Shown piece after piece: positions 33,835-64,000 of a stretch of DNA of 64,000 nucleotides. Every line of letters starts with the position of its first letter. Position 1 is the first letter of the stretch. The position numbers and the translations under genes were made by a program. The notes beneath the pieces were generated by a model. The model was not told the origin of the DNA and made no database searches. It saw only the letters and a list, made by a program, of their open reading frames with translations. The stretch lies in sequence record MK250019.1. One strand, 5' to 3'.

Positions 33835-33914
33835 GGGTAAATGCCTGAGTGGTCGAAGGGAATGATCTGCAAAATCATTATTATACGTCGTGTGTTCGAA
33901 TCACACTTTACCCT
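33835..33914 (+). tRNA. trnC: tRNA-Cys(GCA) with extended variable region
   Basis: Acceptor GGGTAAA/TTTACCC, discriminator T, anticodon arm ATGAT-CTGCAAA-ATCAT and T-arm GTGTG-TTCGAAT-CACAC. Confidence 0.88.
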
Positions 33915-34345: not shown

Positions 34346-34355
34346 CAAATTAATG

Positions 34356-34475
34356 AAGTGTGTAGTTTAATTGGTAAAATATCCTTTGAATAGGACTGTG
34401 CGCAGATAGAACATAATGTTAGTCATATTAATCGCATTATTGATAATGATGTTGGTTCGATTCCAACGACACTTC
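34356..34475 (+). ncRNA. tRNA-like RNA with canonical D/T arms, truncated anticodon hairpin and long insert
   Basis: AAGTGT/ACACTT acceptor, GTTT-AATTGGTA-AAAT D-arm, TCCT-TTGAAT-AGGA hairpin, a 50-60-nt insert and GTTGG-TTCGATT-CCAAC T-arm. Confidence 0.65.
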
Positions 34476-34761
34476 CTAATAAATAAAAAGATCTCGGTAA
34501 TTAGATAAAACATTATATGAGTGAAGCAACTCACCATAACTGCAGATAAATGAGTGAGGGACATAAGAGTGTATGAAGAAAGATGGACTATGGACACCAC
34601 CATATAATTGCGTTTTCAATAATAGTAAAGTAAACTTTAGTATAAGTTCCATTAACGCTAAAATAGAAACATTGTTATTGAAGTCTACTATGCGTGCGAT
34701 GGTTGAATGAAACCATTGTAGTTCTAAGGCATTGTAAAACGTTTTATTTATTAATTTTTAT

Positions 34762-34835
34762 GGCGAGATAGCTTAGTTGGTCAGAGCGCAGGATTCATAT
34801 CCCTGAGGTCGTGTGTTCAAATCACACTTTCGCTA
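34762..34835 (+). tRNA. trnM: tRNA-Met/Ile2 (CAT)
   Basis: Acceptor GGCGAGA/TTTCGCT, anticodon loop TTCATAT and T-arm GTGTG-TTCAAAT-CACAC. Confidence 0.9.
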
Positions 34836-34862
34836 CTATTATTTTTTGATTGTTTATTTTTA

Positions 34863-37266: not shown

Positions 37267-37866
37267 ATGAAGAAAAAAGTGATATTAAAGAAAATTTTAT
37301 TATTTACGCTATTGTTTTTATTACCTTTCATATCAATAAATGCTGCAACTATTGATAGTAATAATAATGCGTATGAAGAAGTAAATGCAAAGACAACAGT
37401 AGTTAAACATACAAAGTCTAGTATTGAAAATTCGTTAGTTGATGAGGCTAGAACATATATCAAGTCGTTATATCCTGGTTGTCCAGATATAATTCCTAGT
37501 TATATTGTAAAAGCAGGTTTAGCAAATAATATTGATATTTGTTTTATGCTTGCTCAAACACAGTTAGAAACTACCTTTGGCAAGGCAGGTGTAGGAAGAA
37601 CGTGTTCAAGACGTTCATTATTTGGTATCGAGAAAAGATACTATAAAACATATAAAGAAGCAATTAATGCGTATGTAGACGTATTGACTTCAAATTATTT
37701 AGTAAAGGGCCGTACAGAACAACATTTGTTAAATAATTATGTTAATAAAAACGGTCATCGTTATGCTGGTAATCCTAAGTATGAATATTATCTTAAGAAA
37801 CATTATAATACAATTGCATCTACAACAAAAATAAAGCAATTGCAACGCCAGTACAAGAGATTATAA
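37267..37866 (+). CDS. GH73 glucosaminidase-like peptidoglycan hydrolase with N-terminal signal peptide
   Basis: FMLAQTQLETTFG, LFG and YAGNPKY motifs. Basic-hydrophobic N-terminus MKKKVILKKILLFTLLFLLPFISINA. Confidence 0.8.
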   Translation: MKKKVILKKILLFTLLFLLPFISINAATIDSNNNAYEEVNAKTTVVKHTKSSIENSLVDEARTYIKSLYPGCPDIIPSYIVKAGLANNIDICFMLAQTQLETTFGKAGVGRTCSRRSLFGIEKRYYKTYKEAINAYVDVLTSNYLVKGRTEQHLLNNYVNKNGHRYAGNPKYEYYLKKHYNTIASTTKIKQLQRQYKRL

Positions 37867-37929: not shown

Positions 37930-37968
37930 AAGGGGATCCATGTTACGTTTACATGGATCCCCTTTTTT
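37930..37968 (+). terminator. strong intrinsic terminator
   Basis: AAGGGGATCCATG / CATGGATCCCCTT plus a T-tract. Confidence 0.88.
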
Positions 37969-38000
37969 GATAAATATAATAAAGAATTTTTATTAAACAT

Positions 38001-39377
38001 ATGGCTTTATATTTAAACAATGCACAATATGGCTCAGGTAATCAATCTTCTCAAGATACACTAATACATAGTTATAATAAATCTTTTTTTTCAGATTATA
38101 ATCATGCAAAGACGGTGTTATTATAGAAAGTTATGAAACCAGGTGAAGTAACATTTGCTTATTATTATGATTCAAAAGTACCTTATGGATAGAATGTTAT
38201 TTTTGCAGTTGGACCATTATCTGATGCAGGCTGTAATACTATATTTAAAAATGCTGATGATATTGACAGTGTAAAAGACGTATTAGATGAAACTATTGCA
38301 GATATAAATGCAAGTGTATCTAATATGGAAACTAAAGTTGATGGAATCATTGAAGAATGCAAAACACCTTTATTAACAAAAATAGAAAAAAACATCAATG
38401 ATATAGATGATATAAAAAGAGATATATCTACAATTAAATCTGATATAGTTAATACTAATGATACATTAACAAGTAAGATTAATCAAGTAAATAATCAATT
38501 AACTGCATAGATGTCTCAAGATAAAACAAACCTTATTAATAAGATTAATGATACGTCAAATGATATAGTTAAATATATTGATAATACATCTAATGCTATT
38601 ATTAATTATATTAATAGATCAGTTTCTCTTGCAGTAGGAAATGTAACTACTGATTATACATAGAAAAATGATGATACATCAATGACATTGGGTAATGCAA
38701 TTTCTACATTAAAATTAAATTTAGAATAGTCTATTTCTGATTTATCTGGTAAACATGATGGAGATATTACCGGTTTATAGAGAATAATTGATGAAGCAAA
38801 AGGTAAAGTAACAGAAAATACAACGACATTATCACAGTATATACAATAGAATAATAGTTTTGTAAGAAAGTTAAATACAAGTATTAATAATGTAAATAAT
38901 GCATTAGATGAACGTATTACTAATCTCAGATAGGATTTTGAAACATTGGAAATACCTAAAAAAATTCATGACTTATCAACAAGGATTGCTACTGTAACAA
39001 CTCAATCAAATGTAGATCATGAAAAACTTAAGGCTATTGATAATTTAGAAAGTAGATTATCCAAATGTGAAGGTCGATATGAAAAACATTTCGAGATGGA
39101 TATGGTTCAGTTAAATGGAAATATAAAAGATATAAATACATCTATTTCAAATATTATTAAAAGTATTGACAATATTAAGATAAAAACTGGTACCAGTGAA
39201 GGAACTGTATAGGATAAGTTTGATAATATAAGTAGTCAACTTTTTAATATAAGTGAACGTTTATCAAAGATAGATTCATCTATTAATGCACTTGAAACAA
39301 AATTTGCTGGAAATGAAACATATCATAATGAATTGTTAAATGAATTATCTTCATATAAAAATTCATTAGATTATTAA
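38001..39377 (+). CDS. coiled-coil structural protein, paralogue family member 1 (458 aa)
   Basis: Continuous with TAG readthrough. N-domain PGEVTFAYYYD...FAVG followed by heptad/hendecad repeats. Confidence 0.8.
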
Positions 39378-39401
39378 TAAAAATTAAAAATATATTATAT
39401 T

Positions 39402-41957
39402 ATGGAATATAAAAGTCCGTTATTAAATTAGATAATTTCTATATTAGACAAACGTTCTGAAGCTGGTGAAAAAAGAATTAAGAAGACAGAAGATTATGTT
39501 AAGAGTTATGATACATCTATTACTCGTCATATAAACAAATAGGTTGAAGAACTTAATACATCTATAAAAACAGCAACAGATAAAGTAATAGGAGATTTAA
39601 ATACAAGTATTAATAATACTGTTGATACCATATCACATGATATTTTGAGTGTTTCAACAAACCTTAAAACCGCCATTGAATAGATTTACTATAATATTAA
39701 TACATCTATTAATGGCGGTAAAACTGATACATCTATATATCTTATTGGTTTAAAAAATGAATTAGAAAGAAAGATAAATGATGTTGACTAGAAGTATAAA
39801 ATTGCTGATAGTTAGTTATCAAGTACGTTAAGTTAGAATATAAAAGATGTATCAACTAAATTAACACAGAAAGTTAATATAATTGATACAAAATATGATA
39901 CAAGTATTTCTAACTTATCATAGAAGCATGATAGTTCATTTATATAGGTTACTAATTTAATTTCTAGTTAGGGAACTTCAATTGGTAATAAAATTACAAG
40001 AGATATTAGTACAGCTAAATAGGAATTAAATTCTAATATATCTACCATATAGAGTAATTTAAATGGTAAAATTGATAATACAAATACTTCTATTAATTTA
40101 TAGTTTGATAGAGTTGCTAGAAAATTAGAACATTAGAATACTTCAATAGATGATATATCAATACGCTTAAATACGACGTCAAGAGCAATAGTAAAAGCAT
40201 TAAATACATCAGCTAATGATTTATATAATATTACAGATGATATATCTACAAAATTAAAAAGTTCATTAAACTAGGTAAAAATAGATATAACAGGAAAATA
40301 TGATGCAGAGATTAGAAAGTTAAATACATCTATTAGAAATTTAGATCTTGATACTACTAACTCATTAAGTACATTAAATACATCTGTAACAACATTAGAA
40401 ACAAATTAGAAAAAATTAAATACATCATTAGCTAGTTTACGAGAATCATTTGATAAATTAGTTGATACTGAAGATGTTAATGGTGTTATAGATACATTCA
40501 GAGAAGTTGAAGATTTTTTATCTAATATATCAGATGAAAAAACATTAACTGGTATGTTATCTGAGTTAAAAACTGGAATAGATTCACACATTGATGCAAG
40601 TATTAAAGATATATCAAATGCAATTGATAATGTTAAAGAAGAAATAGGAACAAATATTAATAATAGAGTTAATGCGTTAGAAACAACACTTAATACAACT
40701 GTAAATACAAAACTTACAGAAATTAATTCATCTATTAATGATATTAGTACACGTTTAAAATAGTCAATAACCGATCAATAGACATATGTATCTACAGAAA
40801 TTGGTAAAATAAATTCATCAATAAAAGATTTAAATACAACAATTAAATAGAATGTTGATACATCTTTAAAAGCAATTCAATCTAAATTAGATTCATCATT
40901 AAAAACAGTTTCAGATTCATTAACTTCAACAACAAGTAGAGTTGCAAAATTAGAATTAAATAACGTAACTGCTGCAAAGGTAACAACCGGTACAAATACA
41001 AAATTATGGAATGATACAACTGACAGTATAAATGAAGATTCATATGTTATTAACAAATAGGTATTAACAACTAAAGAAAATAATGTTGAAAAAACATATG
41101 AATAGAAATTAGTAAACAGTAATATTATAAAAGAAATTAATAAATCTGAAAAAGCAGTTGCATCTAATTTATTAACTGTTAATAATAATATTGCTTCTAT
41201 TAATACAAAATTAAGTAATATTAATTCAAGTATTGGTAATATATTAAATTCTTCATATATAAACAAGAAGAATAAGTATACAACAAACGGATTTAATACA
41301 ATAGGTGGTTGTTTAGATTTTATTATTAATGATATGTATTATACTGCACCTGCAGCTGTAAATGTAACATATACAGTAACACCTACATCATTTATTAGAG
41401 GTAAGAATACAAGTGTTACATTTAAATATACTGTTAATAATTATCCTAATAATATATAGAGTATTACATATAATGGTGCTACAAAAACAGAAAGAACATT
41501 TACAGAAACAATTACAGTAAGTAATTCTGTATCAAGAGCATTATCTGTAGTTTCTAACTATGTTGACAGTAAGGATGCTAGACCAACATCATTTAATAAA
41601 ACATTAACAGTATATGCTAATTTAGAATTATATGTTTGGACATCAACATCAACATCATTTAATAAAGCATATACATCTGCTAATATGCCAGCTGGATATA
41701 CTACATATACATATAATTCAGGTAATTATAGTATAAATGTAAATAATGGTACTGCAGCAAAATATATATTCTTTGTTTCAGATAAGAATTTAGTTGAATC
41801 AAAATTCTTTGTATATGAACATGGTGGTGCACCAACATTAGGTGGTGGTATTACAAATTTAGGAACAATAACAATATAGAAGTATGATGTTGCATAGACA
41901 TATTACTTATATAGATCTAATAATGTCCTTAATGGTAATTGGGACATTAAATTTTAA
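39402..41957 (+). CDS. coiled-coil fibre-like protein with beta-rich C-terminal domain (851 aa)
   Basis: Continuous with TAG readthrough. Repeated LNTSI/DTSI motifs and a Thr/Val-rich Ig-like C-terminus. Confidence 0.78.
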
Positions 41958-41991
41958 CAATAAATAATAAAACTAATTAGTATAATTTTAT

Positions 41992-44900
41992 ATGGCTATA
42001 AAACTTCCAGATACGCTGAGAACTGCAAATGATACCTATCCTATTGCAGTCTCAGAAGAAATAAAAGGTGGTATTCGTGGAGTTTAGACAGTAGAAGATT
42101 TGAGTAGAATAAATAATGCTTTGATTTCTAATGGTATGTTAGTATGGGTAGAAAAATCAAAGAGTTATTACAAATATACAAATGGAACATGGTCTATATT
42201 ATCTGCTTCTGCTTCTGGAACTCCATTACTTACAACTGCATAGATAACAGCATTAAAAAATCAAGGAGTTTTACCTGATAATTACATTTGGATACGTTCT
42301 AAAGATGATATTGATTTAGAATAGGAAGGTGTTGTAAATAAAACATATACAACATCAAAGAATGGTAGTTATGTTGATATATTATTTCAAGCAATAAGAT
42401 AGTTACAGACAGAAGTTGCTAAAATGAGAAATACATTTAAATATGGAATGTATTCTTGTACAAATAAAGAAATGGCAGTTTCTAATGTTGTTAATGAAAT
42501 GGTTGCAACACCTGCAGATGAGCCACTATGGGCAATAGAAGAAGATGGATTATCTTATGTATATGCAATAGATTTTAATTCTGCTGATATTGATTTAAAA
42601 GATCCATTAAAGCAAATAAGAAATGTAAATAACTCATATTATGAAATAAATGGTGATTTATCTGACAAGAAAATTTATTTTGATCATACATTTTCTGGTG
42701 ATATTAAAGATATTGATGAGGATTTAACTGGTTCTACATTGGAAGCATTAGAGGACCCAAAAGAATTTGCATATTTAACAGTAACTAATAAGCGTGAAGG
42801 AAACAAATCATACTTATTAGATTTTTCTGTTCTTATCGAACCATAGAAACATGAGTCGATAAAAGATAATTCACAACGTAAGTCAATTGATAATATTAAT
42901 TTTGGAAATTTATTACCAAATTACGTAGAAACTGTAAATATAATGTTATTATTAAATAGAAAGCAATTTAAAAAAGATAATTGGTATGGAAATAATTATT
43001 TATATGTTTCAATATCAGATTATTATACAAATAACGTTATTGTTTAGGGATACTATAATAAAGATGATGGTAAACTTTATAAAAATATACAAGATTTAGG
43101 AGATCAATATTTCTTTAGTAGATTTTATTTCGGTAAATTAAATTTAAATAAATTAGCATTTTATTCACGTTATCAAGATTTTACAAAATTTATTAATGAA
43201 ACAGATAAAGTTGTTAAACCAAATATTCCTAATGATAGTGATTATAGATATAAAGTTGCACATATTACAATTCGTTCTGTTTCTGATGAAGCAGAATTAA
43301 CAGAAATAAAGCAATACCTTCCTAATAATGAATTAATATGGGAAGAAAAAAATAGTGTTTTATGGATAAAATCAAACGATAAGGTAGTACAAATTGGTAG
43401 TACAAGTAATTCAAATAATAATGGAAATCAAAATAATAATAAAGATAGTATGACACAAGAAGAATTAATAAAAGCTCTTAAAGAAATGGGCATTGTTTAT
43501 GATTCAAATAATGGATTAGAATTAGAATAGGCTAAAGTAGAAGATATTACTTTTATTAATTCTAATTTAACTGATAAGTATATATATTCAATAGATTCGG
43601 AAGGTAATTTACATTCTACTATTGAACCAAAGACAACTTTAAAAGAACGAGTTGCAAATAAAGAATTATATAAATCATCAAAGCCTGGTGCAACATTTAA
43701 ACCAAGAGGATTTGTAGCAAATCTTGTTTCTGATAATCCTACATCAGCAGGTTCACTTTTAAATGATTCTGATAGAATTCATATTTCACAATTTTATGCA
43801 CCATTATCTACAGATATTGAAGAAGGAAAAATTGGTTGTTCTCATGCATTTATCGAATTAAGTAATACATCAACAATCGATTTTTAGTTAGATGGTTGCT
43901 ATTTACATTATTTTAGTCTTAGTGACACTGGAGTATCAACATATTATAATCTTCCGTTAAAAGGTGTAATACCTGCCGGTAATACATTTGTTATTCGTGG
44001 TAAAAAATATGCAGATTATAAAAATTCAAATGTATTTATTAAAGTAAATTCATTTGATTTAGAATGGTTTTTTGAAAAAGATGTATTAGCAGATTTAACA
44101 GTTAATACTGCATATAAAGGATATGGATTAGCATTAACATACGGTAATAAAGTAGGAGATGAAGAAATAGCACCACAAATAACATTAGCTCGTGCAAATG
44201 CATCTGGTTCATATGAGTATAGAGATAATTATATTGATGGTATTTTATACTCATATAAAGTTGCAAATATTCCAGAAAATTATAAAACATGGGCAATTTA
44301 TAATTCAGGATATGATGTATTATCAAATAGTCTATTTAGAGAAACATTCTTACTTGATCCTGCTAAACAAGGATTTTAGGCTCTTTGTTCTAATAAAAAA
44401 GACTCATCAAGAGCACGCCATGAAAAATCAACAGACTTTACATTATTATCACTTGCAAATGAATTTATTGAATTCCCTAAATCCGATTCGGTAAAAGCTG
44501 TGTCTGATTATACACCACGTGCATCATTTGAACATAAAACAGTTATTACAGAAAAAAGTAATATCGATTTAAATAAGCCAAATATGATTACATGTGCCTT
44601 TGGTATTAATATGTTAACTACACGTTGTTTCAACTGGATTTCTGGAGGTATATTTGATGAATTTATTTGGATTAGAAAGAAAGGAAGTACAACTGCATGG
44701 AAAGATTGTGCAAGATATGAATCATATACAAGTTCAAAATGTAGTGTTGTAACTGAGCGTTCTACAAGTGAAATTACAAAGAAAACATTTAATGAAAGTG
44801 ATACAGCATAGAAAGAAGCAAAAACATATATTTATGACAGAATAACCGGAATATTCCCTGGTACAACAACAGAATATACTGCACATAAAGTTATTATTAA

Positions 44901-46551
44901 CTTACCAACACCATCACAGGGTACATCAGAATATGAATATTGTGTTGGTCGTGCATTGCTTGATGGAAGCCCAGACCCTGCACACAGTAATGTAAATGAA
45001 CTTTATACATTTACAATGTATGCATCTAAATATATACCACGAATTTATCAAACTTCTGACCAATAGGGATTCCATTGGATTGAATATCAGGTATGGGCTG
45101 GTGCAGCTAAAAAAATAAATGAATATATTAATTCCACTAAAGGTTCTGAATATATGCCAGTATTAGTAAATACAGGTGATATGACACAATCTGGTTCTCG
45201 TATTTCAGAATGGTTTGATTATTATGAAGCTGGTAAATGTTTATTTAATCACCTTGAATAGATGAATGTTGTTGGTAATAATGACTTAGCTAATATAGAT
45301 CCTACATTATTAGGAAATGGTGATGATTCTGGTAAATCTAATTCATTTTATTTCCATGTATTTTACTGTTATGAAGTAGATAATTTTGGTAATACTGCAT
45401 ATCCTATAATTAATAAGAAATACATACCATCTTTATATTATTTCGGAACAAATGATTATCGATTTATAATGGTTAATTCAGAAATTACTGTAAAATGTTG
45501 TTCTGATTGGTATAATTTATCAAATTATAATATATATACTGGTTATACAGTTGGTACAAATAATAATTATAAAACAGAATCATGGACACCAATATATAAT
45601 ATGTTATTTGCAATAATGAATAATTTTACAGGAAAACAATTTATTACTGCATGTCATGAAATGCCATTTACAGTTATTACTAAGGCAAATATTATGTACA
45701 ATAATTCAATAACAGCAAAGCAAAGAAGTGCATCAGGTACATCATTAGTTGGATCACATTTAAATTCAATAACAGCAGAAGATATTGGTTATGGATTTAA
45801 CTGGTTCTCTCGTTTACTTGAATATTTTGCAGGTAAAGGTAAAACAAAATTATGCATCGGAGGACATAAGCATACATATGCTATGACATTCCCTATTAGA
45901 GAAAATTATACTTATATAGAAAACGGTGTAAAAAAAGATTCTAAAACAGCACCAATGCCTATGTCAGCGAACCTTAATAATGCAATTGAAAAATCAGTTA
46001 GTTGGACAAAAAAATATACATATAATGCAACTGATTGTACATTTACTGAAAGTACTTCTGGTACTGATACTGTACATACAAGTAAGTTGCCATATATTAA
46101 TACAAATGTGAAATCAATGATATATAATGGAGCTACTACTATTTCTGGTGCAGCAAAAGCAGCGCATTTATTTTTACCATATTAGTATTTAAATACATTA
46201 ACTACAAGTAATGCAATTACATACTTAATGTGTTAGGCAACAGGTTATAAGTACTCATCAAATAAGGAATTACCTGCATATACATAGGCATTCTCTGAAC
46301 TTATACCATAGACAACAGAAAAAGAAAAACCAGCAGATTCTCAAAAATACCCAATGTTTATAGATATTTTACTTAATAATACAACTATATCATATAAATT
46401 AATAAGTGTTAATAATGTATTTGACAGTAAATATTTATTTACACAACGAACATATGGAACTTCTGCAAGTACATTAAAGTATATAAAAATAAAAGATAAT
46501 ACTTTATATGGAACTTGGTTAGATAATATTACAACATTAAAAACACTTTAA
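41992..46551 (+). CDS. large virion-type protein with lamin-tail-like domain and purple-acid-phosphatase-like metallophosphoesterase (1519 aa)
   Basis: LTD-like FIELSNTSTIDF*LDGCYLHY...LPLKGVIPAGNTFVIRG and phosphoesterase motifs TSDQ, NTGDMTQ, GNND, CHEMPF and GGHKH. Confidence 0.8.
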
Positions 46552-46574
46552 TAAAAATTATATTATGATATAAT

Positions 46575-49500
46575 ATGAAATATAATGGCAAAGATAATTT
46601 TATAACAGATAATGATATTCTTGTTACTTCTGGTGTTGGAAGTAACAAGAATCTTCATACTGTTATTACTGAATAGTAGGATGATATTGATGAATTAAAA
46701 TCAAATGTAAAATGGATCTATAAATATGGCGGTGTAGGTTCTGGTTCTGGTTCTGGTTCTGGATCCGGTTCTGGCGGAAAATGGAAACCAACAATATAGA
46801 TAGGAGGTATATTAGCAGAAACTGGTGTTCCTGTAGATCTTTCTAATAAAATAATAGATAATGTTGCATTAGTTGATATAAATATTGCTATTAGTAATCC
46901 AGGAGCTGGTGGCTACTAGTTTAAAATTTCATATTCATATGATGATGGTACATATCAATCATATCCTGAGTTATTAACAACAACTAATAACTGTAGTTGT
47001 ACATTTACTCTTAAATTAACAAAAAATAGTAAATTTGGTTTAAAAATTTAGGATATTGATAATAATAGTAAAGATTATATTTTTACATATTTTTTATTCG
47101 GTCTTAGTTATAGTATAAAAGCAATGGCATATAATGCTCAAGGTAAATTATATGAATTACCAGATACTAATTATAAACCGAAATCATATCCTAATGGTGT
47201 TGTATATAGATTAGAAATTAATAATTTTGGTGGATTTAATCTTAATTATAATGTTGGTAATACTATAGATTATAAAATTATTTCTATAAATGAGCAAGAT
47301 TATAAATTATATAATAATAATCCAAATAAAGGACCATATTATGATGAAACTAATCATAAGGGAATGATTGATAAATCACAAGTATCTATTAAATTAGACT
47401 ATTTAATAGATAATAAGGTATTATCAAATGAACTTAATTTTGGTACATAGACATTTTTTGCTAATATAATTAATATTTTAAATGGTGTAGCAGATAATCA
47501 TACAATTAGTTCAGAGTATTCTATAGTTCCAGATACAAATGAATATATAATTTGTTTATCAACATCAATAAATGGTAAAATATATAATGATAATACTGAT
47601 ATTACTGACGAAGAAGCAAATAAAGAAGCATTTTATGCAGGTGATAAAGTAACATTTAATTTGAGACCATTTAACTTTCCTACTGAAACAATTCAAGTAA
47701 ATTATGTATTAATTAATTAGAAAAATGGTATTAATATAAGTAGTACACTAAATTTAAACGCTGGTCGTTATACATCTGCTTCTTTTAATATATACACAGG
47801 ATGGACAAAAATTATTATCAATAAAACAATTACTAAATGGTATTATGGTAAATCTGTATAGTCAACTATTAATTGGTATAATGAAGAAGGTGATAAACAA
47901 TCTAAGGCAAGTAATTTAATTTCATCATATGTAAGATTTAATAATTCTATTTCAGATAATATGGTGTCTAATAGTATATTTAAATCTATAAAAATTAATA
48001 ATTATTATGAATTAACAAAAAATATAAATGCATAGGATAAAATTATTGATTTATATGGTACAAGTACATCTTTTGATATTAATACATGTATGCATATTGC
48101 ACTTGGTGTACAATTTTCTTCATCAAATGTAAATGAAAAAATATTAGAGTTAAAAAACTCTAATCATTAGACTATGTTTACATTATACCAATCAAAATGT
48201 GTATTTACAAATGGTGGAGATGCAAAAATATATATTCCAAAAGAAAAATAGTATGCACCTCAAGATTTTGCAAAATATCATTTAATTGATATTTATATAA
48301 AACCAGCAGATCCATATATTTTAACTAATACTGTAGAAGGTAATAAATCGTAGGATTCTTTATATTATATCCAAGATTTAAAAGATAAGATAACTACTGA
48401 AAATAATACGAACCATAATAATGAACTATATTATGCTGAGATTTATATAGATGGTATTACAGATTGTATTACTACAACATTTACAAGTTCATATTCAGAA
48501 CTTAGATATTTATATTTGAAAAATATAAATATCTCATATAATTTAATTGAGTTAAGTAAGTTTAATTCATTAAGATATACATTTAATGATATTGATGCAG
48601 TTTTATATTATTATACATATAAATAGTTATTATCAAAAAATACTTCGATTACATAGAACAATATAAATATGATTTCTAATATATTATCATATGATTATAA
48701 TTCTATTTCTTGTGATTTGAGTAATAAATGTATTGTTAGAAAACATAATTAGTTACGTATAACTAAAGAATTTATAGATACTATTTCTAAATACATAGAA
48801 ATCCCTATTTATATAATAAATGTTAGTCATACACGTGAAAATGATAGTACAACATCTATTTTTTAGTGGTTAAATGGTTCATACGATGAAAATGTAAATA
48901 TATAGTCATGGCCTATAAAGTCATCAAATATTGATGGTGTACATAGTACAGGTATTACATATATTTCACCTACTGACCATTCATCAACAGTAATAAAATT
49001 TCCAAATAAAGATGAATATACATAGGCAATATTTACATTAGATATACAAGGTTCATCTACACGAAGAAACCATGGAAAGAACTTAGATTTAAATTTAGTA
49101 AATAATAATACAACAACAGGAACAAAATTATTATATTCACCTAATTTTGATTCTGCTGATGATAATACATTCTTACCAGAATCTAAATTTACATTAAAAG
49201 CAGATATTGTAGACTCTGGTCATACAAATAATACTGTAATGGGTAAATTTATAAATGATAACACCAAAAAATTCGAAACAAATTCTAAAGGTATGTATAA
49301 GAATTATATTAAGAATTGTTTGGAAGGATTCCCATGTATTGTAATATTAAATATTGATTATGAAGTAGATAACTCTGTACCTGAATATTATTTCTTAGGT
49401 ATATATAACTTTAACTTAGGTCGTGGTTCATATTCAAACTTAGGTTATGTTGATAATTCAATTTTTGATTCAAAATTGGAATCAGTTTCACCAGAAAAAC

Positions 49501-55250: not shown

Positions 55251-55258
55251 TATAATTA

Positions 55259-55297
55259 AGAGAGATACAACTGAGATTTGTATCTCTCTTCTTTTTT
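55259..55297 (+). terminator. intrinsic terminator
   Basis: AGAGAGATACAA / TTGTATCTCTCT plus a T-tract. Confidence 0.8.
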
Positions 55298-55329
55298 AAT
55301 AAATATAAAAAGAATTTTAATGAATATAA

Positions 55330-58300
55330 ATGGATAAGAAATGTTCTCAACTCATTATAGGTCAATCAATAATTCATAGTTTTAACCCTAAACCGTTTAA
55401 AAATATGGATACTGCTATTTATGCTCTCAATAACAAAGAATTAAGAGCTGGAGAAATTGCTATAGCATATTATAATGACCCTACTGAAACAAGAGGAATT
55501 GGAGCTATTGTAGCAACTGGTAATATTCTACCTGGAGGAAATCAAATATTCAAGAATACAGCATATACAGATAAACTTATAAAAAACGTTAAAGAATTAA
55601 TCGAATCTAATTCAGTTGATATAAGTGTAATAGAAGAAAACGTAAATAATAATATTGCAGATATTGCTGTTTTAAAAACATAGTTAAAAAAATTAACAGC
55701 AGATACAAATAATAATAATTCTTCAATAGATGATAAATTAAAAGAAATCAATATCATTATTGATAATATGAAAAAGGATGTTTCAAATATTATCGATAAT
55801 ATTAATAAAATTGTTGCTGATGCTTCAAAATCTATTGTTGATACAGCAGCTTCTGTTTCCAAAGATTATTTAGCAGCAGATACTTCATTAAAAAACTATG
55901 TTGATAATGAAAACATAAAAATTAATCAAAAAATTGATAATATTTCATCAAATTTTGATACAAAAGTCGAGGAAATTAGTACCAAAATAAATTCCAATAC
56001 AAGTATACTTGAAAATACAATAAATAATAATTCATCATTAATTTATAATGATATTTCAAAGTTAGATGATAAAGTAAATTCTTATAATACAAGTTTAAAT
56101 ACATCTTTAGCATTTAATGTTTCTACACTTAATTCTCGTATCGATGATAATAAAAATTATGTTGATATACGTGAATCTCTTATTAGAAAATATGTTGATT
56201 CTAAAGATGATCAAATAAACTGGAATATTAATGATACATCAAAACATATTCATTATCGTATTGATGAAGAAGTTCATAAACTTAATGATAGAATAACGCA
56301 GGAACATATTGATATGAATAGAGTTATTGCTGATAATAAAACAGAAGCAAAGCGCTATGCAGATCAAATGTTAACAGAAGCAAAATCATATACAGATGAA
56401 GTAGAAGAATATACTAAAGCTTCTATTAAACAAGCAGAACTTGATTCAAAGAAATATACAGATGATGAAATATCAAATTTAGATAATGAATTATCAGAAT
56501 CTATTCATAATACAAGTTTATATGCAAAAGAATGTTATGATGATGTAAAAAAACATCTTAAATTACAAAATGCATCATTAATTACATATGTAAATGATGA
56601 AATCAGAATGTGTGATGAACGAGTTACTGATAGAGTAAATAGTGTTAAAACATTAGTAGATTCTACAAAAACTCAGTTAAATACGTCTATTAATAAAGTA
56701 TATGAAAATGCATTAAAATATACTAATGACACTAAGAGTGAGATATTAAAACATATATTAATTAATGATATTAAAGTAAGGGAAGATTTTGCAAAAGCTG
56801 ATGCTGCATTAGATAAAAAAATTGATGATACTTCTAAATTATTAGGTGATTATGTTGATAATACGTCAAATGCTATTGTTGACCATATTAAAGATACATC
56901 AAAGTTAATATGGAATTATGTTGATAATACATCTAATGATATTGTTTCATATATTAATAATACATCTAATGATATTGTTTCATATATTAATAATACATCT
57001 AATGCTATTGTCGCATATATAGATAAGCAAGATAATGCATAGAAAGATTATACAGATGCAAAGAAAAAAGAAATAATTAATTTTGTTGAAGACCTTTCTA
57101 ATAATTTTAAAACTTATATTGATACCAGAGATAATGCAACATTAAGTGATGCAAAGATTTATACAAATGGAGAAATTCAAAAAGTTAATAATACAATAAC
57201 AACACTTGATGAAAAAGTAGAAGATTATAATAGAAATACACATGAATTAATTACAAATGTTTCAAATGGAATTATCAATGATTATAAAACAGAAATTAAA
57301 AATGTAATTGATGATGTTTCAAGAAATGATACATGGTTATATAATCATATCGAGAAATATAATACAGATCTTTCTGGTAAAATTGATACCAATAATCAAA
57401 CAGTAACAAAATTACTCAATGACGTTTCTGATGGTCTTTATCAAAAAATTGAGAATACATCAGATTATTTAGAAGAGGTTATTACTGCATTAGAAACAAA
57501 GCATAATGATGAAGTAAAGATAACAAATACTTCTATTATGAATTTTGTTAATTCTTATAATTCAAGTACTGCTACTGCTATTAATGCTCTTAATACAAGT
57601 ATTAATGATTATTGGAAAAATATAACAGATACAATTAATACAAATTTAGGAAATGTAAGTACAGGTGTTTTAGGAAAGATTAATACTATATAGAAAGATT
57701 TATCTACATATATTTAGACAGCTGAAAGTACATTAAATTCATTATATAAAAATGCAGATTCCAGTCTTCTTGGATATATAAATGATCAAGATACAAAACT
57801 TCAAAATAACATTGATGATATTTCTACAAAGATTGTTAATAAGTTTAATACTAAATGTGAAAAATTAAGTAATTTAATTAACACTACCACAACTAATTTA
57901 AATTCATCAATCAATAGTGTTCATGATACATTATTCCAGAAAATAGAAAATACATCTACAGAAATTGTTGATGCATTAAATACATCAATATCTAATATTA
58001 ATATTAAATTAGGTTAGGATAAATCTGAATTAATAACAAAGATTGATGATATTTCCACAAAGATTGTTGATGCGTTAAATGTTTCAATTAATGATATTAA
58101 TAAGTTGCTTAAACAGAAAGATGTAGAGTTAGATAACAAGATTGATACTACATACACCAAAATTATTGGAGAGATGAATGCATCTGATGGTATTTTAAAT
58201 AAACGTATAACCGATCTTGAAACAAAACATGTTAATGAATTAAAGCAAAAAGAAAAAGATCTTACAACATTAATTACTAACACAAAAACAGAATTATCTG

Positions 58301-59943
58301 ATCAACATACAAAAGATAAAAATGCTATTATTACAAAGTATGATAAATTAACATCTGATAATACTACTGCAATTGATAATGTTAGAAAAGATTTTGAAAC
58401 TGCAGATGAAGCAATCCATACAAAATATGATAAGTTATGTAAAGATAATAAAGATGAGTTAATAAGAAAAATTGATGATATTTCTACAAAGATTGTTAAT
58501 GCATTTAATACTTCTATTAGTAATGTATATGATGAATTAAAGTAGGCAGATAGTAATTTAGATATTAAATACAAAGGAATTACAGATGATATTATTACAG
58601 ATTTTAATACATCAATTGGTAAAGTATACAATGAATTAAAGCAAACAGATAGTGATTTATTAAAGAAAATTAATGACGCAAGTAGTTTAATTCCAAAAGC
58701 ATAGGATGGTGCTGTTACAACATATGAAGCATTGAAATATGTATGGAGTGACGGTAATAATGCTTCTGATAAATGTGTTGTTGGTGCAGGTTAGACTAAT
58801 GTTGTTTTAAAAGATAATAAAGTTCAATTTGTTTTAGGTGCATGGAATAATGGGACAACAAAGCTTCGTTATACAGAAATTCCAGAAACAACCACAACAA
58901 ATAATGGTCTTTTATCTATTGATTCTAAATAGAAATATGATAATTATGCAAATGAAATTCAAACTATTAATCAAACTATTACTGAAGTTAAATAGAATTT
59001 AAGAACAGAAACAACTACACGTTAGACTGAAGATCATAAGTTACAAACTAGTATTGATACAATTAATAATACTACAATACCTAATTTACATACAACTATT
59101 ACAACAGAAGTTAATAATAAATATGATCCACAAATTAAGACAATTAACGGTAAGATAACAAGTGAATCTACTACATTACAAGGTAATATAGATAATCTTA
59201 AAACAACATTACAAACTGATTATGACACTAAATTAAGTGAATTGAATACTTCTATTAATAATAAAGTATATAAAGTATTAGATGGTAGAATTACAGATAA
59301 AATAAGTACTGTAAATACAAATTATAAAGCAGAAGATTTACGCTTACAAGGTGAAATAGATAAGATTAATAATACTACTATTGATAAAAAGGTTAATGAT
59401 CTTAAAACAACATTAGAAGATAAGTATGATCCTGAAATAAAGACAATTAAACAAAATATTTCAACTAATCAGTCTGATATTATTGATAAAAAGCTACCAA
59501 GTTTAAAGACTTCTATTGAAACAGATTATAATAAGAAAATAACAGCTGAATCAAATGAACGAAAGATAACAGATTCATCATTAAAAACTGATATTGATTT
59601 ATTAACGAAGTCTGTTAATACCATAAGTAATCTTATCGGAACAGTAGATAAAGATAATAACAAAAATATTATTGAGATGTTTAAAGATGTAAATCAATCT
59701 ATTACAGATATTAAACAATCTATTGCTTAGTTAGATACTCGTATAACATCACTTGAAGCAACAGGTACAACACATCCTGATATTGAAAATAGGCTTAAAG
59801 TTCTCGAATCTAAATATAATTAGATAACAACAATGTCTAGTGATATTACTGATATTAAAGCAAAACTTAATAATATCAATGCTGATCACGAAAACTTATA
59901 TAATGGTGTAAAAACTTATAATGAATCATTAAACTATGATTAA
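55330..59943 (+). CDS. coiled-coil structural protein, paralogue family member 2 (1537 aa)
   Basis: N-domain LRAGEIAIAYYND...VATG and about 1400 aa of coiled coil. Four track ORFs join in one frame. Confidence 0.85.
56924..57010 (+). repeat. 33-bp tandem repeat (11-aa NNTSNDIVSYI), about 2.6 copies
   Basis: AATACATCTAATGATATTGTTTCATATATTAAT repeated in frame. Confidence 0.85.
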
Positions 59944-60030
59944 ATAAATATAATGGTGATATAGAAATGAAAAGCTATATCACCATTTATTGTTTTCAGA
60001 TAAATATAAAAAATATAGATTTTAATATAT

Positions 60031-61695
60031 ATGAATGTTTATGATTTACCTCCTCGCAGACCAGGAGTAAACGCATGTCACCCATGTCCACCTCCACCAC
60101 CAATGCCTCCACATTGTGGTCCTCATCATGGTCCATGTCATGATCCATTCCATGATCCTTGTTGTGAACCTCCACATCATTGTCATCCACCATATTAGAT
60201 AATTAATCATTATAATAAAGTATGTTTTAAAAATTATGATGAAGCAGTTAGTAAATTAAAAGTAAAGAATTTACTTCCTGGTGAAATGGCATTTGCTTAT
60301 TATTTTGATAAAACAGCAGATTATGGAATTAATGCTATTGCTGCAGTTGGCTCAATTAAATTAGGTGGAACTAATATTATCTATGATAATGCAGATAAAG
60401 TTCAACAACTTATGGATAAATTATAGGATACAGTTTCTGCAAATAATGAGAAATTTGATTCTATCAAAACCAAATTAGATATGTTGGATGATATTTCAAC
60501 AAAATTAGATAATATTATTAAAAATGATTCATCTAATTCATCCACTATTACTAGTTCACTTGATGGTATTAAAAAAGATATAGAAAATCTTAAAGATTCT
60601 GATACTTCTATATTCGAAAGACTTGATACTATTGATTCTCAAGTAAACCAGATTGGCGAATATTTAGAAACTCATGAAGAATTTGCGCAGGCATTGGATG
60701 CATCTGTAAAGAAACTTCGTGATGATGTAGATAATCTTGGACTTGATGGAAAACTTAATGAGTTAGATTAGAAGATTGAACAAACAAAGCAAGACATCCT
60801 TACATAGGCTACAGCAGATCATGCTAAACTTAAATCAGACTTTGAAAAGCAAATCAATGATTTATCTACTAATTACTCAAGTAGTCTTGACGATCTTAAA
60901 GTTGCAATCACTGCAGAAATTGAAGCTGCAACAACGCCTATAAAAAATGATATTTATGATTTATAGGTAAAAGACGGTGTATTAGATAAGAAAATTGATG
61001 ATACAAAAGTTGAAACTGTTACAGAATCTAAACAATATACAGATCAAAAAATTGAAGCTACAATGCAAGATATTAATACTTCATTAGGAAAAATGAAGAA
61101 TGATATTCATGATTTATCTGATCTTATTACTGAATCAAAAACTGATTCAACTACTGCACATCAAGAATTAAAAACTTATATTGATAGAATTAAAACAGAT
61201 ATTACTGGTGAAAATACAACTTTTAAAGGCGAAGTTACCGCAGAACTTAATTCTCAAAAGCAATATTTGAAAGATTCCATAGAAGGATTTAAGAGTGAAT
61301 ATACAGCATCAACAAATGATTCTATATAGAGAGAATGTGGAAAAGTATAGGCAAAACTTGAAGAGTTTATTAATACAGCAAATACAAAACATTCTGCAAT
61401 TGAAGCAAAAATTTTAACGATTAACCAAAATTTTGATACATATAAAACAGAAGTAAACGGTCAAGTTGATAATAAGATTGCTAAGTTAAATACAGATATG
61501 AGAAACTATCTTGATAAAGCAATTTCTTAGGATAGAATTCATTATGATGCAATATATGCACGTAAAGATGAAATGCATAAACAAATAAGTGGTGGTAAAG
61601 GTATTGTTATTGAAAATGGAGTAGCAAACCTTACTATTGATGATAATGGTATTTTAACAATTGGTGGTAAACATTATCAGTTAACACAGATTTAA
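60031..61695 (+). CDS. coiled-coil structural protein with His/Cys/Pro-rich N-terminus, paralogue family member 3 (554 aa)
   Basis: CHPCPPPPPMPPHCGPHHGPCHDPFHDPCCEPPHHCHPP, then LLPGEMAFAYYFD...AAVG and coiled coil. Confidence 0.85.
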
Positions 61696-61718
61696 TATTT
61701 TATTAAATAAACAATTAT

Positions 61719-61755
61719 AAAGAGACTATTTTTCGCGAATAGTCTCTTTCTTTTT
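61719..61755 (+). terminator. intrinsic terminator
   Basis: AAGAGACTATT / AATAGTCTCTT plus a T-tract. Confidence 0.8.
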
Positions 61756-61794
61756 AATAATAAATATAAAAAGAAATTTTAAACAAATATAAAC

Positions 61795-64000
61795 ATGGCA
61801 GGATTTATGGATAATAACAAATATGGTCATCATAATGTTCCACCTGTTGGCCTTAATGGATTTAATAAGATATGTTTCACTGATTAGAAAGAAGCAGAAA
61901 ATATGTTGTTAAATAAGGCATTGTTACCAGGTTAGCTTACATTCGCATACTATTATGATAATGATTCAGCTAATAGCGTTAATGTCATGGCAGCAGTCGG
62001 CACATTAAAAGGAGAGAAAGACAATCATATTTTTGTTAGTTATGAAACTATAAATTAGTTAATTGACTCTATAGATGATTCATTAGATGATTATGATACT
62101 AGCTTAATATATATTCGTAAGGAAGTTATGAATAAACTTTCTGTTTTAGAAGATGAATAGACTAAATTATCAAATAAGGTTGATAACATCTTACCAGATA
62201 TGCAACCAAAGTTTGATGAAATATATACAAAGTTAGAATCATTAGAATCAGCAGGAAAAGAATATACTGATACAAAAGTTAATGAATTAACTGAATATGT
62301 TAATTCTTCTGTAATGGAAAAGATTAATAATTATGAAGGCACAATGTCTGATATGATATTAGATGCATCTTCTAAATTAGATAACATGCAGAAGGAATTT
62401 GAATCAAAAGCGAAAGAAATTCTTAACAGAAGTGAAGATGTATATAATACTCTTGATGTTTCTCTTCGTAATTATGTTGATAATGAAATGTTGGGAATGC
62501 AACAGTTTGTTCATTCTGAAACAACACAAGCAGTTATTGACATGAATGCAAAATATGCTGTTTTGAAAAAAGCAGTTGCATCTATAAATGCGTCAGTTAA
62601 TGATGTAGATATTAAACATAACAAAAAGGAAACAGAATTAAATAGAACTATTGTTGAAACAGCAACACAATTAACAGAAGATTTATAGGTTGCTAATGTT
62701 TCACTTATTAATTATATTAATCAATAGTCAGAATTATTTAATAAGAGAATCGATAAGAAGATTGATGAACTTGAATTTAATGTAAAATCTAAAAATATTG
62801 ATTTAACAAATACAGTAGAAGAATATCAGCATAATATTAAAAATGATATTGCTGTATTCAATACATCTATGAGAACTTTTGTTAAATCAAGTCTTGCCAC
62901 AGTTTAGACAGATGTAAATTCAAAGTATTCAGAATTAAAAACATATGTTACATCAAATGATGCATCTTTATTAAATTATGTTAATGCACTTGAAGTTGCA
63001 TAGAAGACATATATCAATAAGCATGATTCTGAAATTAAATCTTGGATTGCAACTGCTAATACTTCTTTATTTAATATTGTACGTTCAACTGATAGTAAGT
63101 TAAAGGATGATATTGATGCAATGGATTCACGTCATCAGGCAATGTATCGTTCAGTAGAATCAAGACTCGATAATCTTATTGATGATATTTCAACAGATCT
63201 TAATATCCTTGTTAATGAATATAATAAGGAAATTAAAAACTTTACACGTAAACATGTAAGCGATCTTGAAAATCAACTTAAAGTTCAAAATGTAAGTCTT
63301 GTAAATTATATTGACGATAAAGCACAGGAAGGGGTTAATGAAACTCGTTTACTCAATGCATCTCTTCGCACACAATTAAAGAATACTGTAAATTTACTTA
63401 ATACAAGTATTAACAATTCAATTCAATATACAGACGATGAAATTTCTAATTTGAAAACATATGTTGATAATGAAAATTCATCTATTATAACTTATGTTGA
63501 TAATCAAGATTCAAAAGTTAAGTTATATGCTGAATTAAAAGATAAAGAAGTAAAAAATTATATTGATGAATTAGAAGAGCAACTTAAGAAATATTCTAAT
63601 GAAGGAGATTCTTCTGTTGTTAATTATATTAAATTAACAAAAGATAATATTGAAGAGTTTGTTAAAAAACAGGATGAAGATACATTAAAGAAAGCATATA
63701 TTCATGATGATGAAATCAGAAATAATATGATTGCAGACTATAATGCATTTGTTCGTAAGCAAAAAGATATTGATGCATCTTTATTAAATTATGTTAAAAA
63801 TACAGATACTTCATTATTTAATTATATTAAGAATAGAGATGAACAAATAAAGAGATGGATTGCTATTGGTGATACGTCAATTTATAATTATTTCAAGTCT
63901 ATTAATACATCATTATTTAATTATGTAACAAAGAAAGATACCGATTTACAGAATACTATTGTAAATACAGGTACAAAGTTACAAAATGATATGGAAGTAT
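61795..64000 (+). CDS. coiled-coil structural protein, paralogue family member 4 (partial, runs off the right edge)
   Basis: LLPG*LTFAYYYD...AAVG N-domain and DASL/NTSL/DTSL repeats. Confidence 0.85.

What the first reader, a model, noticed from the sequence alone, without database searches (positions are those of the whole stretch)
38001..64000. Four-member paralogue family: shared N-terminal PG(E/Q)xx(F/I)AYYxD...A(V/T)G domain plus coiled coils of very different length
Seen: the domain occurs in genes at 38001 (458 aa), 55330 (1537 aa), 60031 (554 aa) and 61795 (more than 735 aa). Members 1, 2 and 4 start right after a terminator, and all four have a late-type motif. Inference: a common capsid- or tail-docking domain carrying fibres of different length, like the hair-like appendages of some jumbo phages. 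I do not recognise the domain.
Basis: partly seen in the sequence, partly recalled or inferred. Interest (0 to 1): 0.68.

Follow-up and report, generated by a model that had tools for sequence, protein, structure and literature searches.

The report
Lak megaphage coiled-coil fibre gene family
A giant gut phage (Prevotella megaphage Lak-A2) encodes five related proteins that share a previously undescribed N-terminal "knob", predicted to form a trimer and followed by helical rods about 60 to 2,200 residues long; they are most likely fibres on the virus particle.

Summary
The window is Prevotella phage Lak-A2 (MK250019.1, bases 1-64000), and the four genes are open only when TAG is read as Gln.

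- **Family:** The ~85-aa N-terminal domain is truly homologous (9 of 10 pairs have E <= 4e-6). There are five members, not four: a 148-aa member lies at 151 kb, and member 4 is 2,698 aa in full.
- **Distribution:** The domain matches no Pfam, PHROGs, NCBIfam, PDB or BFVD entry. It has only 72 cluster representatives among 1.84 billion proteins, all unnamed. Those whose context was checked lie in Lak-like recoded phages.
- **Structure:** It models as a small alpha/beta domain, and a trimer test passed (0.80 against a best control of 0.01). The signature residues sit at the subunit interface.
- **Rods:** They are proline-free for up to 2,205 residues and have an 11/3 (hendecad) period, not a heptad one.
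- **Evolution:** Gene lengths are conserved between clades. Member 1 keeps its first ~110 residues (93% identity) while the rest is swapped between Lak-B1 and Lak-B2. Its operon is deleted in Lak-C1.

Best reading (confidence 0.6): late-expressed trimeric virion fibres that share an N-terminal knob serving trimerisation and anchoring. Where they sit on the particle (tail, neck or head) is unresolved.

The parts
38001..39377 (+). Member 1 (458 aa, 9 TAG=Gln). The N-terminal domain is at about 38052-38300, followed by a helical rod of ~360 aa. It ends in the motif YKNSLDY, which resembles the end of member 2.
37930..37964 (+). Hairpin terminator before member 1 (14 bp stem, dG -24.5 kcal/mol, followed by a T-run).
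37970..37982 (+). Late-type upstream box ATAAATATAATAA, 18 nt before the member 1 ATG.
39402..41957 (+). 851-aa passenger gene. It has no family domain. It consists of a 643-aa proline-free hendecad rod and a ~200-aa beta-rich C-terminal tip that varies between Lak-B genomes. It has no box of its own and is probably co-transcribed with member 1.
41992..46551 (+). 1519-aa passenger gene. It is globular, with a weak lamin-tail-domain hit and no family domain.
46575..55250 (+). 2891-aa passenger gene. It has no known domains. It is absent from Lak-C1.
55258..55290 (+). Hairpin terminator that ends the member 1 operon and precedes member 2.
55299..55311 (+). Exact upstream box ATAAATATAAAAA, 18 nt before the member 2 ATG.
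55330..59943 (+). Member 2 (1537 aa). The domain is at about 55357-55614. A 1,053-aa proline-free hendecad rod follows, then a proline-containing stretch at roughly aa 1120-1390 that includes a compact insert (aa ~1120-1200), then a terminal heptad segment.
59955..59984 (+). Hairpin before member 3 (10 bp stem, dG -13.4 kcal/mol, weaker T tract).
60000..60012 (+). Exact upstream box, 18 nt before the member 3 ATG.
60031..61695 (+). Member 3 (554 aa). A 55-aa Pro/His/Cys-rich N-terminal extension (60031-60192) precedes the domain (60193-60450). The rod has a strong heptad segment, and the protein ends in a short beta-type C-terminus.
61721..61747 (+). Hairpin terminator before member 4.
61760..61772 (+). 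Exact upstream box, 22 nt before the member 4 ATG.
61795..64000 (+). Member 4; only the first 735 aa lie in the window. The gene runs to 69891 in MK250019.1 (2,698 aa). The domain is at 61843-62094. A 2,205-aa proline-free hendecad rod follows, then five C-terminal LGGIKxGY...NAYV repeats.

Best explanation
These genes encode a family of late-expressed, homotrimeric, alpha-helical fibres of the Lak megaphage particle.

Each protein starts with an alpha/beta domain of about 85 residues. Three copies pack into a knob that nucleates a parallel coiled coil. By analogy with other phage fibres, this knob is the virion-proximal end that plugs into the particle.

The knob is followed by an unbroken helical rod, mostly of hendecad (11/3) periodicity. 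The rod's length is specific to each paralogue. At 0.15 nm per residue the rods would measure roughly 8, 55, 60, 200 and 330 nm.

Member 1 appears to be the proximal adaptor of an exchangeable accessory module. Its distal part co-varies with the next gene (851 aa), which carries a variable tip of the receptor-binding type.

- **Shown:** homology, N-terminal position, periodicity, length conservation, the mosaic breakpoint, and the late-gene signals.
- **Supported by a model only:** the trimer.
- **Inferred:** presence in the virion, the anchoring role of the knob, and the site of attachment (tail/baseplate, neck or head).
For: - **Identity and code:** The window is Lak-A2. All in-frame stops are TAG. 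Lak phages use TAG mainly in structural-gene regions (PMC6784885).
- **Copy number:** There are five paralogues in Lak-A2, five in Lak-B1 and five in Lak-C1.
- **Position in the protein:** The profile search found 72 representatives, and in 70 the domain starts within the first 80 residues.
- **Fold:** The AF2 model of the domain has pLDDT 79.5: a helix, a beta-hairpin and a further strand, leading into a helix.
- **Trimer test on a 148-aa family member:** score 0.80 against a best control of 0.01. The runs agree in at least 91% of contacts and pLDDT is at least 82. In the calibration, 20 of 30 solved homomers and 1 of 23 monomers reached the mark. The conserved N, PGE, Y and G-x-L residues lie in the interface.
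- **Rods:** Proline-free spans reach 2,205 aa, 1,053 aa and 643 aa. The periodicity peak is at 3.62-3.66 residues, 7-11 times the shuffled control.
- **Length conservation, A2 vs B1:** 458/457, 1537/1525, 554/552 and 2698/2666 aa, at 39-69% identity.
- **N-terminal conservation:** The first 100 aa are more conserved than the rest (72-84% against 46-69%).
- **Mosaicism:** Member 1 of B1 and B2 is 93% identical over 100 aa and unrelated after about aa 110. The tip of the 851-aa partner diverges in the same genomes.
- **Late-gene signals:** A late box and a hairpin precede each gene. The box also occurs upstream of the tail sheath gene.
- **Tail context:** The same window holds a tail sheath gene and a baseplate-hub gene.
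- **Expression:** Contigs from RNA libraries of four studies cover members 2 and 3.
Against: - There is no direct evidence that any member is in the virion. Lak phages are uncultured, and no proteome or image exists.
- No known fibre-anchor fold or family matches the domain. The best structural Z is 3.9.
- In the trimer model the signature residues make subunit contacts rather than lying on an exposed surface. That fits a pure oligomerisation role equally well.
- Only the trimer was tested. Dimers and tetramers were not, and hendecad bundles can be tetramers.
- Tail fibres of well-studied myoviruses are beta-structured, not alpha-helical.
- The model of member 4's tip failed (pLDDT 33), and its only fibre-family hit is below threshold (PF11133, 16.4 bits against a 24.6 cut-off).
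- The RNA evidence rests on assembled contigs, which may include DNA carry-over.
Confidence: 0.6

Rival explanations
1. The N-terminal domain is only a trimerisation or folding nucleus for the coiled coil, an N-terminal counterpart of the T4 foldon. It is not the part that docks to the particle. Attachment, if any, would use the variable extreme N-terminus or the C-terminus.
For: - In the trimer model nearly all signature residues (N18, P39-G40-E41, Y46, G63, L65 in P0032 numbering) are inter-chain contacts.
- The residues ahead of the domain differ between paralogues. One example is the 55-aa Pro/His/Cys-rich extension of member 3.
Against: - A folding nucleus would not need to stay constant while the rest of member 1 is replaced (93% identity, then unrelated).
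- Five paralogues keeping one module over long divergence is the typical pattern of a shared docking site.
- A few conserved polar residues (K35 and D49 in P0032 numbering) lie outside the predicted interface.
Confidence: 0.2
2. The proteins are not external fibres but internal or assembly-stage rulers or scaffolds. Examples would be a tail tape measure (member 4 at 2,698 aa would span about 400 nm) or capsid-size rulers.
For: - Paralogue lengths are conserved between clades despite 39-69% identity, as expected of a ruler.
- There are weak PHROGs hits to tape-measure families (E 6.6e-5 to 6.4e-4).
- No tape measure gene was identified in the window.
Against: - The tape-measure hits fall only on the coiled-coil region and are of the same kind as the SMC, ZorA and apolipoprotein noise.
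- Tape measures are single-copy, not a five-member family ranging from 148 to 2,698 aa.
- Member 4 ends in repeats of a fibre type.
- Member 1 is mosaic, and its operon is dispensable in Lak-C1. That suits accessory host-range fibres, not an essential ruler.
Confidence: 0.12
3. The rods are amphipathic 11-mer-repeat helices that bind lipid or membrane surfaces, in the manner of apolipoproteins or perilipins. They would act in the infected cell or at the host envelope rather than as rigid fibres.
For: Pfam Apolipoprotein A1/A4/E (PF01442) scores 105.6 bits on member 2, above its 90-bit cut-off. It scores 82.8 bits on the 851-aa protein. The periodicity is 11/3.
Against: - Apolipoprotein repeats are punctuated by prolines about every 22 residues (own knowledge). 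Here there is no proline for 1,053 to 2,205 residues.
- The trimer model buries the hydrophobic stripe in a parallel bundle.
- No signal peptide or membrane segment is evident in the translations (by eye, not tested).
- The match is explained by shared periodicity alone.
Confidence: 0.04

Closest known systems
T4 fibritin (Wac), the neck whiskers
   Same: Both have an N-terminal virion-attachment segment followed by a parallel trimeric alpha-helical coiled-coil shaft, and both are late structural proteins of a contractile-tailed phage (own knowledge of fibritin). The trimer and helical rod are supported here.
   Different: - There is no detectable sequence or fold similarity.
- There is no C-terminal foldon.
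- The period is hendecad rather than heptad over most of the rod.
- The rods are up to about 2,200 residues long, against 486 aa for the whole of fibritin.
- There are five paralogues instead of one gene.
Modular tail fibres and tailspikes that share an N-terminal anchor domain (P22-family tailspike head-binding domain; multi-spike phages such as CBA120; branched fibres of phiKp24)
   Same: The N-terminal module is conserved while the distal part is exchanged by recombination. Several paralogues carry the same module. phiKp24 is cited in PMC13282480.
   Different: - The anchor fold is unrelated to any solved one (best Z 3.9).
- The shafts are alpha-helical rods rather than beta-helices.
- Most members have no recognisable enzymatic or lectin tip.
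Hair-like or head-fibre-like appendages of jumbo phages (Tenacibaculum PTm1/PTm5 capsid fibres; Erwinia Y3 hairs along the tail) and the phi29 head fibre gp8.5
   Same: All involve multiple long filaments decorating a very large phage. PTm1 also infects a Bacteroidota host (PMC13282480). Member 4's tip gives a weak hit to the phi29 head-fibre family.
   Different: - The profile search of 1.84 billion proteins found no homologue outside unnamed metagenomic proteins. Those whose context was checked lie in Lak-like recoded phages.
- The PF11133 hit is below its cut-off.
- The morphology of Lak particles is unknown.
Hendecad coiled coils such as tetrabrachion and stalk segments of trimeric autotransporter adhesins
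   Same: Both show 11/3 hydrophobic periodicity giving nearly straight, very long surface rods, with polar Asn-containing core motifs (own knowledge). N[TV]S is enriched 4-12 fold here.
   Different: These are cellular proteins with other anchors. There is only chance-level sequence similarity (YadA E 0.85). The oligomeric state was tested here only as a trimer.

Membership tests
T4 fibritin (Wac) family | Sequence or profile similarity to fibritin, including the C-terminal foldon | tested here: not met
   No fibritin family appears among the Pfam, PHROGs or NCBIfam hits. The C-termini are YKNSLDY-type ends or beta repeats.
T4 fibritin (Wac) family | Parallel homotrimeric alpha-helical coiled coil | tested here: inconclusive
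   The trimer model scores 0.80 against a best control of 0.01 for a 148-aa member. This is a prediction only, and other stoichiometries were not tested. The long rods are hendecad, not heptad.
T4 fibritin (Wac) family | N-terminus bound to the neck of the virion | not testable with these tools
   No particle structure or proteome exists for Lak phages.
phi29 head fibre (Pfam PF11133) | Score above the Pfam gathering threshold | tested here: not met
   Member 4's tip scores 16.4 bits against a 24.6-bit cut-off, E 0.0064, over 36 residues only.
Apolipoprotein A1/A4/E (Pfam PF01442) | Score above the gathering threshold | tested here: met
   Member 2 scores 105.6 bits against a 90-bit cut-off. 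The other members score below it.
Apolipoprotein A1/A4/E (Pfam PF01442) | Tandem 11/22-mer amphipathic helices punctuated by proline; a secreted lipid-binding protein | tested here: not met
   The proline-free span is 1,053 aa in member 2 and 2,205 aa in member 4. The match is explained by the shared 11/3 periodicity. These proteins are therefore not filed as members.
Phage tail tape measure protein | Significant profile match; single-copy gene | tested here: not met
   Only weak hits on the coiled-coil region (E 6.6e-5 to 6.4e-4). There are five paralogues of 148-2,698 aa. Synteny with tail-assembly genes was not examined.
Modular phage fibre with a conserved N-terminal anchor (a functional class, not a sequence family) | N-terminal module conserved while the distal part is exchanged between close relatives | tested here: met
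   Member 1 of B1 and B2 is 93% identical over the first 100 aa and unrelated after about aa 110; the lengths are 457 and 279 aa. Between A2 and B, the first 100 aa are the most conserved block in members 2 and 3, and among the most conserved in member 4.
Modular phage fibre with a conserved N-terminal anchor (a functional class, not a sequence family) | Physical presence on the virion and binding of the N-terminal module to a structural protein | not testable with these tools
   This needs virion proteomics, cryo-EM or binding assays.

The most novel reading that the evidence does not exclude
Lak megaphages may carry a graded set of straight trimeric hendecad coiled-coil filaments, all plugged into the particle by one new knob domain.

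- The predicted lengths are about 8, 55, 60, 200 and 330 nm.
- The longest, with about 2,200 uninterrupted helical residues, would be among the longest continuous coiled coils known. It would also be the longest alpha-helical fibre of any phage, comparable to the whole tail.
- Such filaments could act as long-range antennae in the gut.
- The shortest member (148 aa) may be a stub that caps unused docking sites.
- Member 1 may be an adaptor for a swappable host-range cassette.
Probability: 0.3. Interest if true: 0.75.

Novelty: new variant of a known kind. Interest (0 to 1): 0.6.

Why it matters
Lak phages are among the largest known phages. They are widespread in human and animal guts, remain uncultured, and have never been imaged. 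Most of their structural genes are unannotated.

This family gives a concrete and testable prediction about their morphology: several classes of very long helical fibres. It also points to a candidate host-range module (member 1 and its operon) that is swapped in Lak-B2/B4 and deleted in Lak-C1.

In addition, it defines a new, compact trimer-forming domain and an extreme natural example of hendecad coiled coils. Both are of interest for protein design and for annotating recoded megaphage genomes.

Tried and rejected
**Searches that found nothing for the domain**
- Table 11 reading: the genes are fragmented, so TAG=Q was adopted on the evidence.
- Pfam, PHROGs and NCBIfam: only coiled-coil noise, none of it covering the domain.
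- PDB profile search: nothing; the best hit was EmbR at E 0.13.
- Foldseek against PDB and BFVD: no hit with E <= 0.001.
- VIA-align wide: best Z 3.9 (SH2-like and COMM-like topologies), well within the noise range.
- ESM Atlas with P0032: only leads below 0.9, including Mtd_N and alanine-zipper clusters. This is not used as evidence.
- Source names: none in any database.
- Literature: the family is not described in the Lak papers read.

**Steps that failed or were unavailable**
- AF2 of member 4's C-terminal repeats: pLDDT 33, unusable, so no fold search was run on it.
- PDB sequence searches for member 4's tip and the 1519-aa protein: nothing.
- No whole genome is held for the window. The GenBank record was reached through loci instead.

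It was left out.
Neither was re-sent.

**Ideas considered and rejected**
- Spanin: the only support is a weak Rz hit at E 0.0025 on the coil, and no membrane segment is evident.
- A read-through fusion of member 1 with the 851-aa gene: they are in frame in A2 but separated by two TAA stops, and they are out of frame in Lak-B2.

Full report
**Identity of the window and genetic code**

Under table 11 the region holds only short ORFs. The true ends are TAA. They are 38001-39377 (458 aa), 55330-59943 (1537 aa), 60031-61695 (554 aa) and 61795 to the window end (735 aa).

The window is 100% identical to bases 1-64000 of Prevotella phage Lak-A2, MK250019.1. This is a 541-kb uncultured megaphage. Its use of code 15, mainly in structural-gene regions, is published (PMC6784885). 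The recoding is therefore shown by the genome itself and not assumed. No suppressor tRNA lies among the six tRNAs of the window.

**The family is real, and larger than reported**

- The four N-termini align with 12-14 invariant columns: N, F, A, K, G of PGE, AYY, D, A-x-G and N-x-I.
- In all-against-all blastp of the ~85-aa domains, 9 of 10 pairs reach E <= 4e-6 at a database size of 2e7. The tenth pair (members 2 and 4) is linked through the others.
- A profile search of the whole Lak-A2 record finds a fifth copy at 151074-151520. It is a 148-aa protein made of the domain plus a short coil.
- Member 4 runs on to 69891 and is 2,698 aa in full.
- Lak-B1 and Lak-C1 also have five copies each.
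- A complete 673-kb relative has only one copy, of 432 aa. The expansion is therefore specific to the Lak-A/B/C lineage.

**How widespread and how known**

A profile of ten domains was searched against 1.84 billion cluster representatives. It gave 72 hits at E <= 1e-3 and 59 at E <= 1e-10. In 70 of the 72 hits the domain starts within the first 80 residues. By eye, the hits fall into subfamilies that mirror the five paralogues. The duplications therefore appear older than the A/B/C split.

None of the ten clusters looked up carries a name in any source. A distant member lies in another TAG-recoded phage contig.

No known family or structure matches the domain:
- Pfam, PHROGs and NCBIfam give only coiled-coil noise that never covers the domain.
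- A PDB profile search gives nothing.
- The AF2 model has pLDDT 79.5: a helix, a beta-hairpin and a third strand, then the start of the rod helix.
- That model has no Foldseek match in PDB or BFVD at E <= 0.001.
- Its best Z against 48,161 chains is 3.9, well inside the noise range stated by the tool.

The Lak papers that were read do not describe the family.

**The rods**

The rods contain almost no proline. The proline-free spans are 2,205 residues in member 4, 1,053 in member 2 and 643 in the neighbouring 851-aa protein. Heptad periodicity is significant only near the ends and in part of member 3.

The dominant hydrophobic period in all rods is 3.62-3.66 residues, at 7-11 times the shuffled control. 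That is 11/3, a hendecad repeat. It explains why the apolipoprotein model, built of 11/22-mer repeats, scores up to 105.6 bits. That match reflects shared periodicity, not homology, because the proline punctuation of apolipoproteins is absent.

At 0.15 nm per residue (own knowledge) the helical parts would measure about:
- 8 nm for member 5
- 55 nm for member 1
- 60 nm for member 3
- 200 nm for member 2
- 330 nm for member 4

Gene lengths are nearly fixed between clades A and B, at only 39-69% identity: 458/457, 1537/1525, 554/552 and 2698/2666 aa.

**Oligomer**

A three-copy model of a 148-aa database member (P0032, with an 11-row alignment) scored 0.80. The best of three controls scored 0.01. 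The runs agree in at least 91% of contacts, and pLDDT is at least 82. In the tool's calibration, 20 of 30 solved homomers and 1 of 23 monomers reached the mark. That calibration used two copies and its own alignments, so the counts hold only roughly here.

The interface has two parts. One is a heptad-spaced stripe along the coil. The other, within the knob, is made of the family's signature residues. This supports a parallel trimer. It also means that much of the domain's conservation serves subunit packing. Only the trimer was tested.

**Late-gene signals and operon structure**

- Each of members 1-4 follows a hairpin with a U-rich tail: 37930-37964, 55258-55290, 59955-59984 and 61721-61747. 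Their folding energies range from -13.4 to -24.5 kcal/mol.
- Each member, including member 5, has the box ATAAATATAAAAA (0-1 mismatch) ending 18-22 nt before the ATG.
- The same box precedes a TAG-containing 928-aa gene on the minus strand. It also lies upstream of the tail sheath gene.
- With one mismatch allowed the window has 12 matches, against 6.6 +/- 2.3 expected. Only 2 of 100 shuffles reached 12.
- The 851-, 1519- and 2891-aa ORFs between members 1 and 2 have neither box nor hairpin. They are spaced 23-34 nt apart, so they look co-transcribed with member 1.
- Contigs from RNA libraries of four studies cover members 2 and 3. This is consistent with expression, but contigs cannot prove it.

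**Evolutionary behaviour**

Between A2 and a B-type phage, the first 100 residues are the most conserved block in members 2 and 3 and among the most conserved in member 4 (72-84% against 46-69% overall).

Member 1 is the fastest-evolving member, at 37-39% identity between A and B. Within clade B it is mosaic. B1 and B2 are 93% identical over the first 100 aa and unrelated after about residue 110. The B2 protein is only 279 aa, while its downstream partner grows from 851 to 991 aa.

The tip of that partner is 81% identical to A2's in most B genomes but only 48% identical in B2 and B4. These are the same genomes in which member 1 is replaced.

In Lak-C1, member 1 has an internal deletion and a premature stop. 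A2 positions 39439-55245, which hold all three passenger genes, are missing.

Together these findings show a conserved N-terminal module joined to an exchangeable and even dispensable distal system. That is the pattern seen in phage fibre and host-range modules.

**Context**

The window also holds a tail sheath gene at 19618-23469 and a baseplate-hub-like gene at 11071-11841. A glucosaminidase gene ends just before member 1. Replication genes and HNH endonucleases are interspersed. The phage is therefore contractile-tailed, and the fibre cluster (38-70 kb) lies in the same late region.

**Interpretation**

The best-supported reading is a family of late, trimeric, alpha-helical virion fibres. 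They share a new N-terminal knob that both trimerises the rod and, by analogy with other phage fibres, anchors it to the particle.

I cannot tell whether they sit on the baseplate, along the tail, on the neck (as fibritin does) or on the head.
- The alpha-helical shafts, the range of lengths and a sub-threshold head-fibre hit on member 4's tip favour whiskers or hairs.
- The variable-tipped partner of member 1 favours a tail-associated host-range role, at least for that member.

Three rivals remain:
- a pure trimerisation role for the domain
- internal rulers or a tape measure
- lipid-binding 11-mer helices

The evidence for and against each is set out under Rival explanations. Chance similarity is excluded.

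**Novelty**

The architecture of N-terminal anchor plus trimeric coiled coil is known from T4 fibritin. Conserved-anchor and swappable-tip modularity is known from many tail fibres and tailspikes. What is new:
- the domain family itself, which has no sequence or fold relative
- its fivefold expansion
- the hendecad rods of extreme, conserved length

I therefore rate it a new variant of a known kind.

**Limits**

- Two masked N stretches (10570-10622 and 10949-10976) were left untouched.
- Read laying was given 5,901 letters.

Noticed in passing
window 1-64000 (tRNAs at 31177-34836): TAG is used as a sense codon only in some genes. Examples are the fibre genes, the sheath gene, and the 558-, 539- and 928-aa genes. 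Many others have none, which fits late-gene-specific recoding. None of the six tRNAs in the window (His, Pro, Arg x2, Cys, Met) is a TAG suppressor.
   Followed up: partly
window 39439-55245, compared with Lak-C1 MK250029.1 (L017): Lak-C1 lacks about 15.8 kb that holds the 851-, 1519- and 2891-aa genes. Its member 1 has an internal coiled-coil deletion and a premature stop, giving 205 aa. The whole member 1 operon is therefore dispensable or decaying in that lineage.
   Followed up: yes
window 38001-41957; Lak-B2 L050:289-4093: The combined length of member 1 and the next gene is nearly constant: 458+851=1309 in A2, 457+851=1308 in B1, and 279+991=1270 in B2. The partner's first ~17 residues (MEYKS...ISILDKR) stay conserved even when the rest diverges. 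This hints at an end-to-end two-part fibre.
   Followed up: partly
window 60031-60192: Member 3 begins with a 55-aa extension made almost only of Pro, His and Cys. Cys/His-rich N-terminal extensions recur in distant family members (P0059, P0065, P0067, P0069, P0081). This may be a metal-binding or disulfide-forming segment ahead of the knob.
   Followed up: partly
window 58690-58930 (member 2, aa ~1120-1200): A compact stretch containing Pro and Gly interrupts the rod of member 2, between a 1,053-aa hendecad segment and the C-terminal part of the protein. It may be a knob or a hinge.
   Followed up: no
rods of members 1, 2 and 4 and of the 851-aa protein: The tripeptide N-[T/V]-S is enriched 4-12 fold over shuffled sequence (for example 20 observed against 1.6 expected in member 2). 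The most common context is L-N-T-S-I. It may be a polar core layer of the hendecad bundle.
   Followed up: partly
window 41992-46551: By eye, the 1519-aa protein contains motifs like those of metallophosphoesterases (GD..., GNNDL, GGHKH). It also gives a weak lamin-tail-domain hit (E 3e-4). Pfam does not detect a Metallophos domain, and no PDB sequence relative was found.
   Followed up: partly
window 37267-37866; L026:497-1384; L039:4423-5142: A peptidoglycan hydrolase gene (a glucosaminidase in Lak-A2, a phage lysozyme in two distant relatives) lies shortly upstream of the family member in three divergent phages. In Lak-A2 a terminator separates the two genes.
   Followed up: partly
window 2-1624 (-), 23599-25416, 31319-32320: Several HNH/homing-endonuclease-like genes are interspersed among the structural and replication genes. 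One of them lies directly after the tail sheath gene.
   Followed up: no
window 10570-10622 and 10949-10976: Two masked N stretches lie just upstream of the baseplate-hub-like gene at 11071-11841. They were left as they are.
   Followed up: no
MK250019.1 68665-69888 (member 4 tip); NC_055883.1 16209-16661: Member 4 ends in five repeats of LGGIKxGY...NAYV(T/S)(L/I)T. Lak-B has one repeat fewer. The only match outside Lak phages is a hypothetical protein of crAss-like phage cr85_1 (30% identity, E 6e-4), encoded between the portal and lysis genes.
   Followed up: partly
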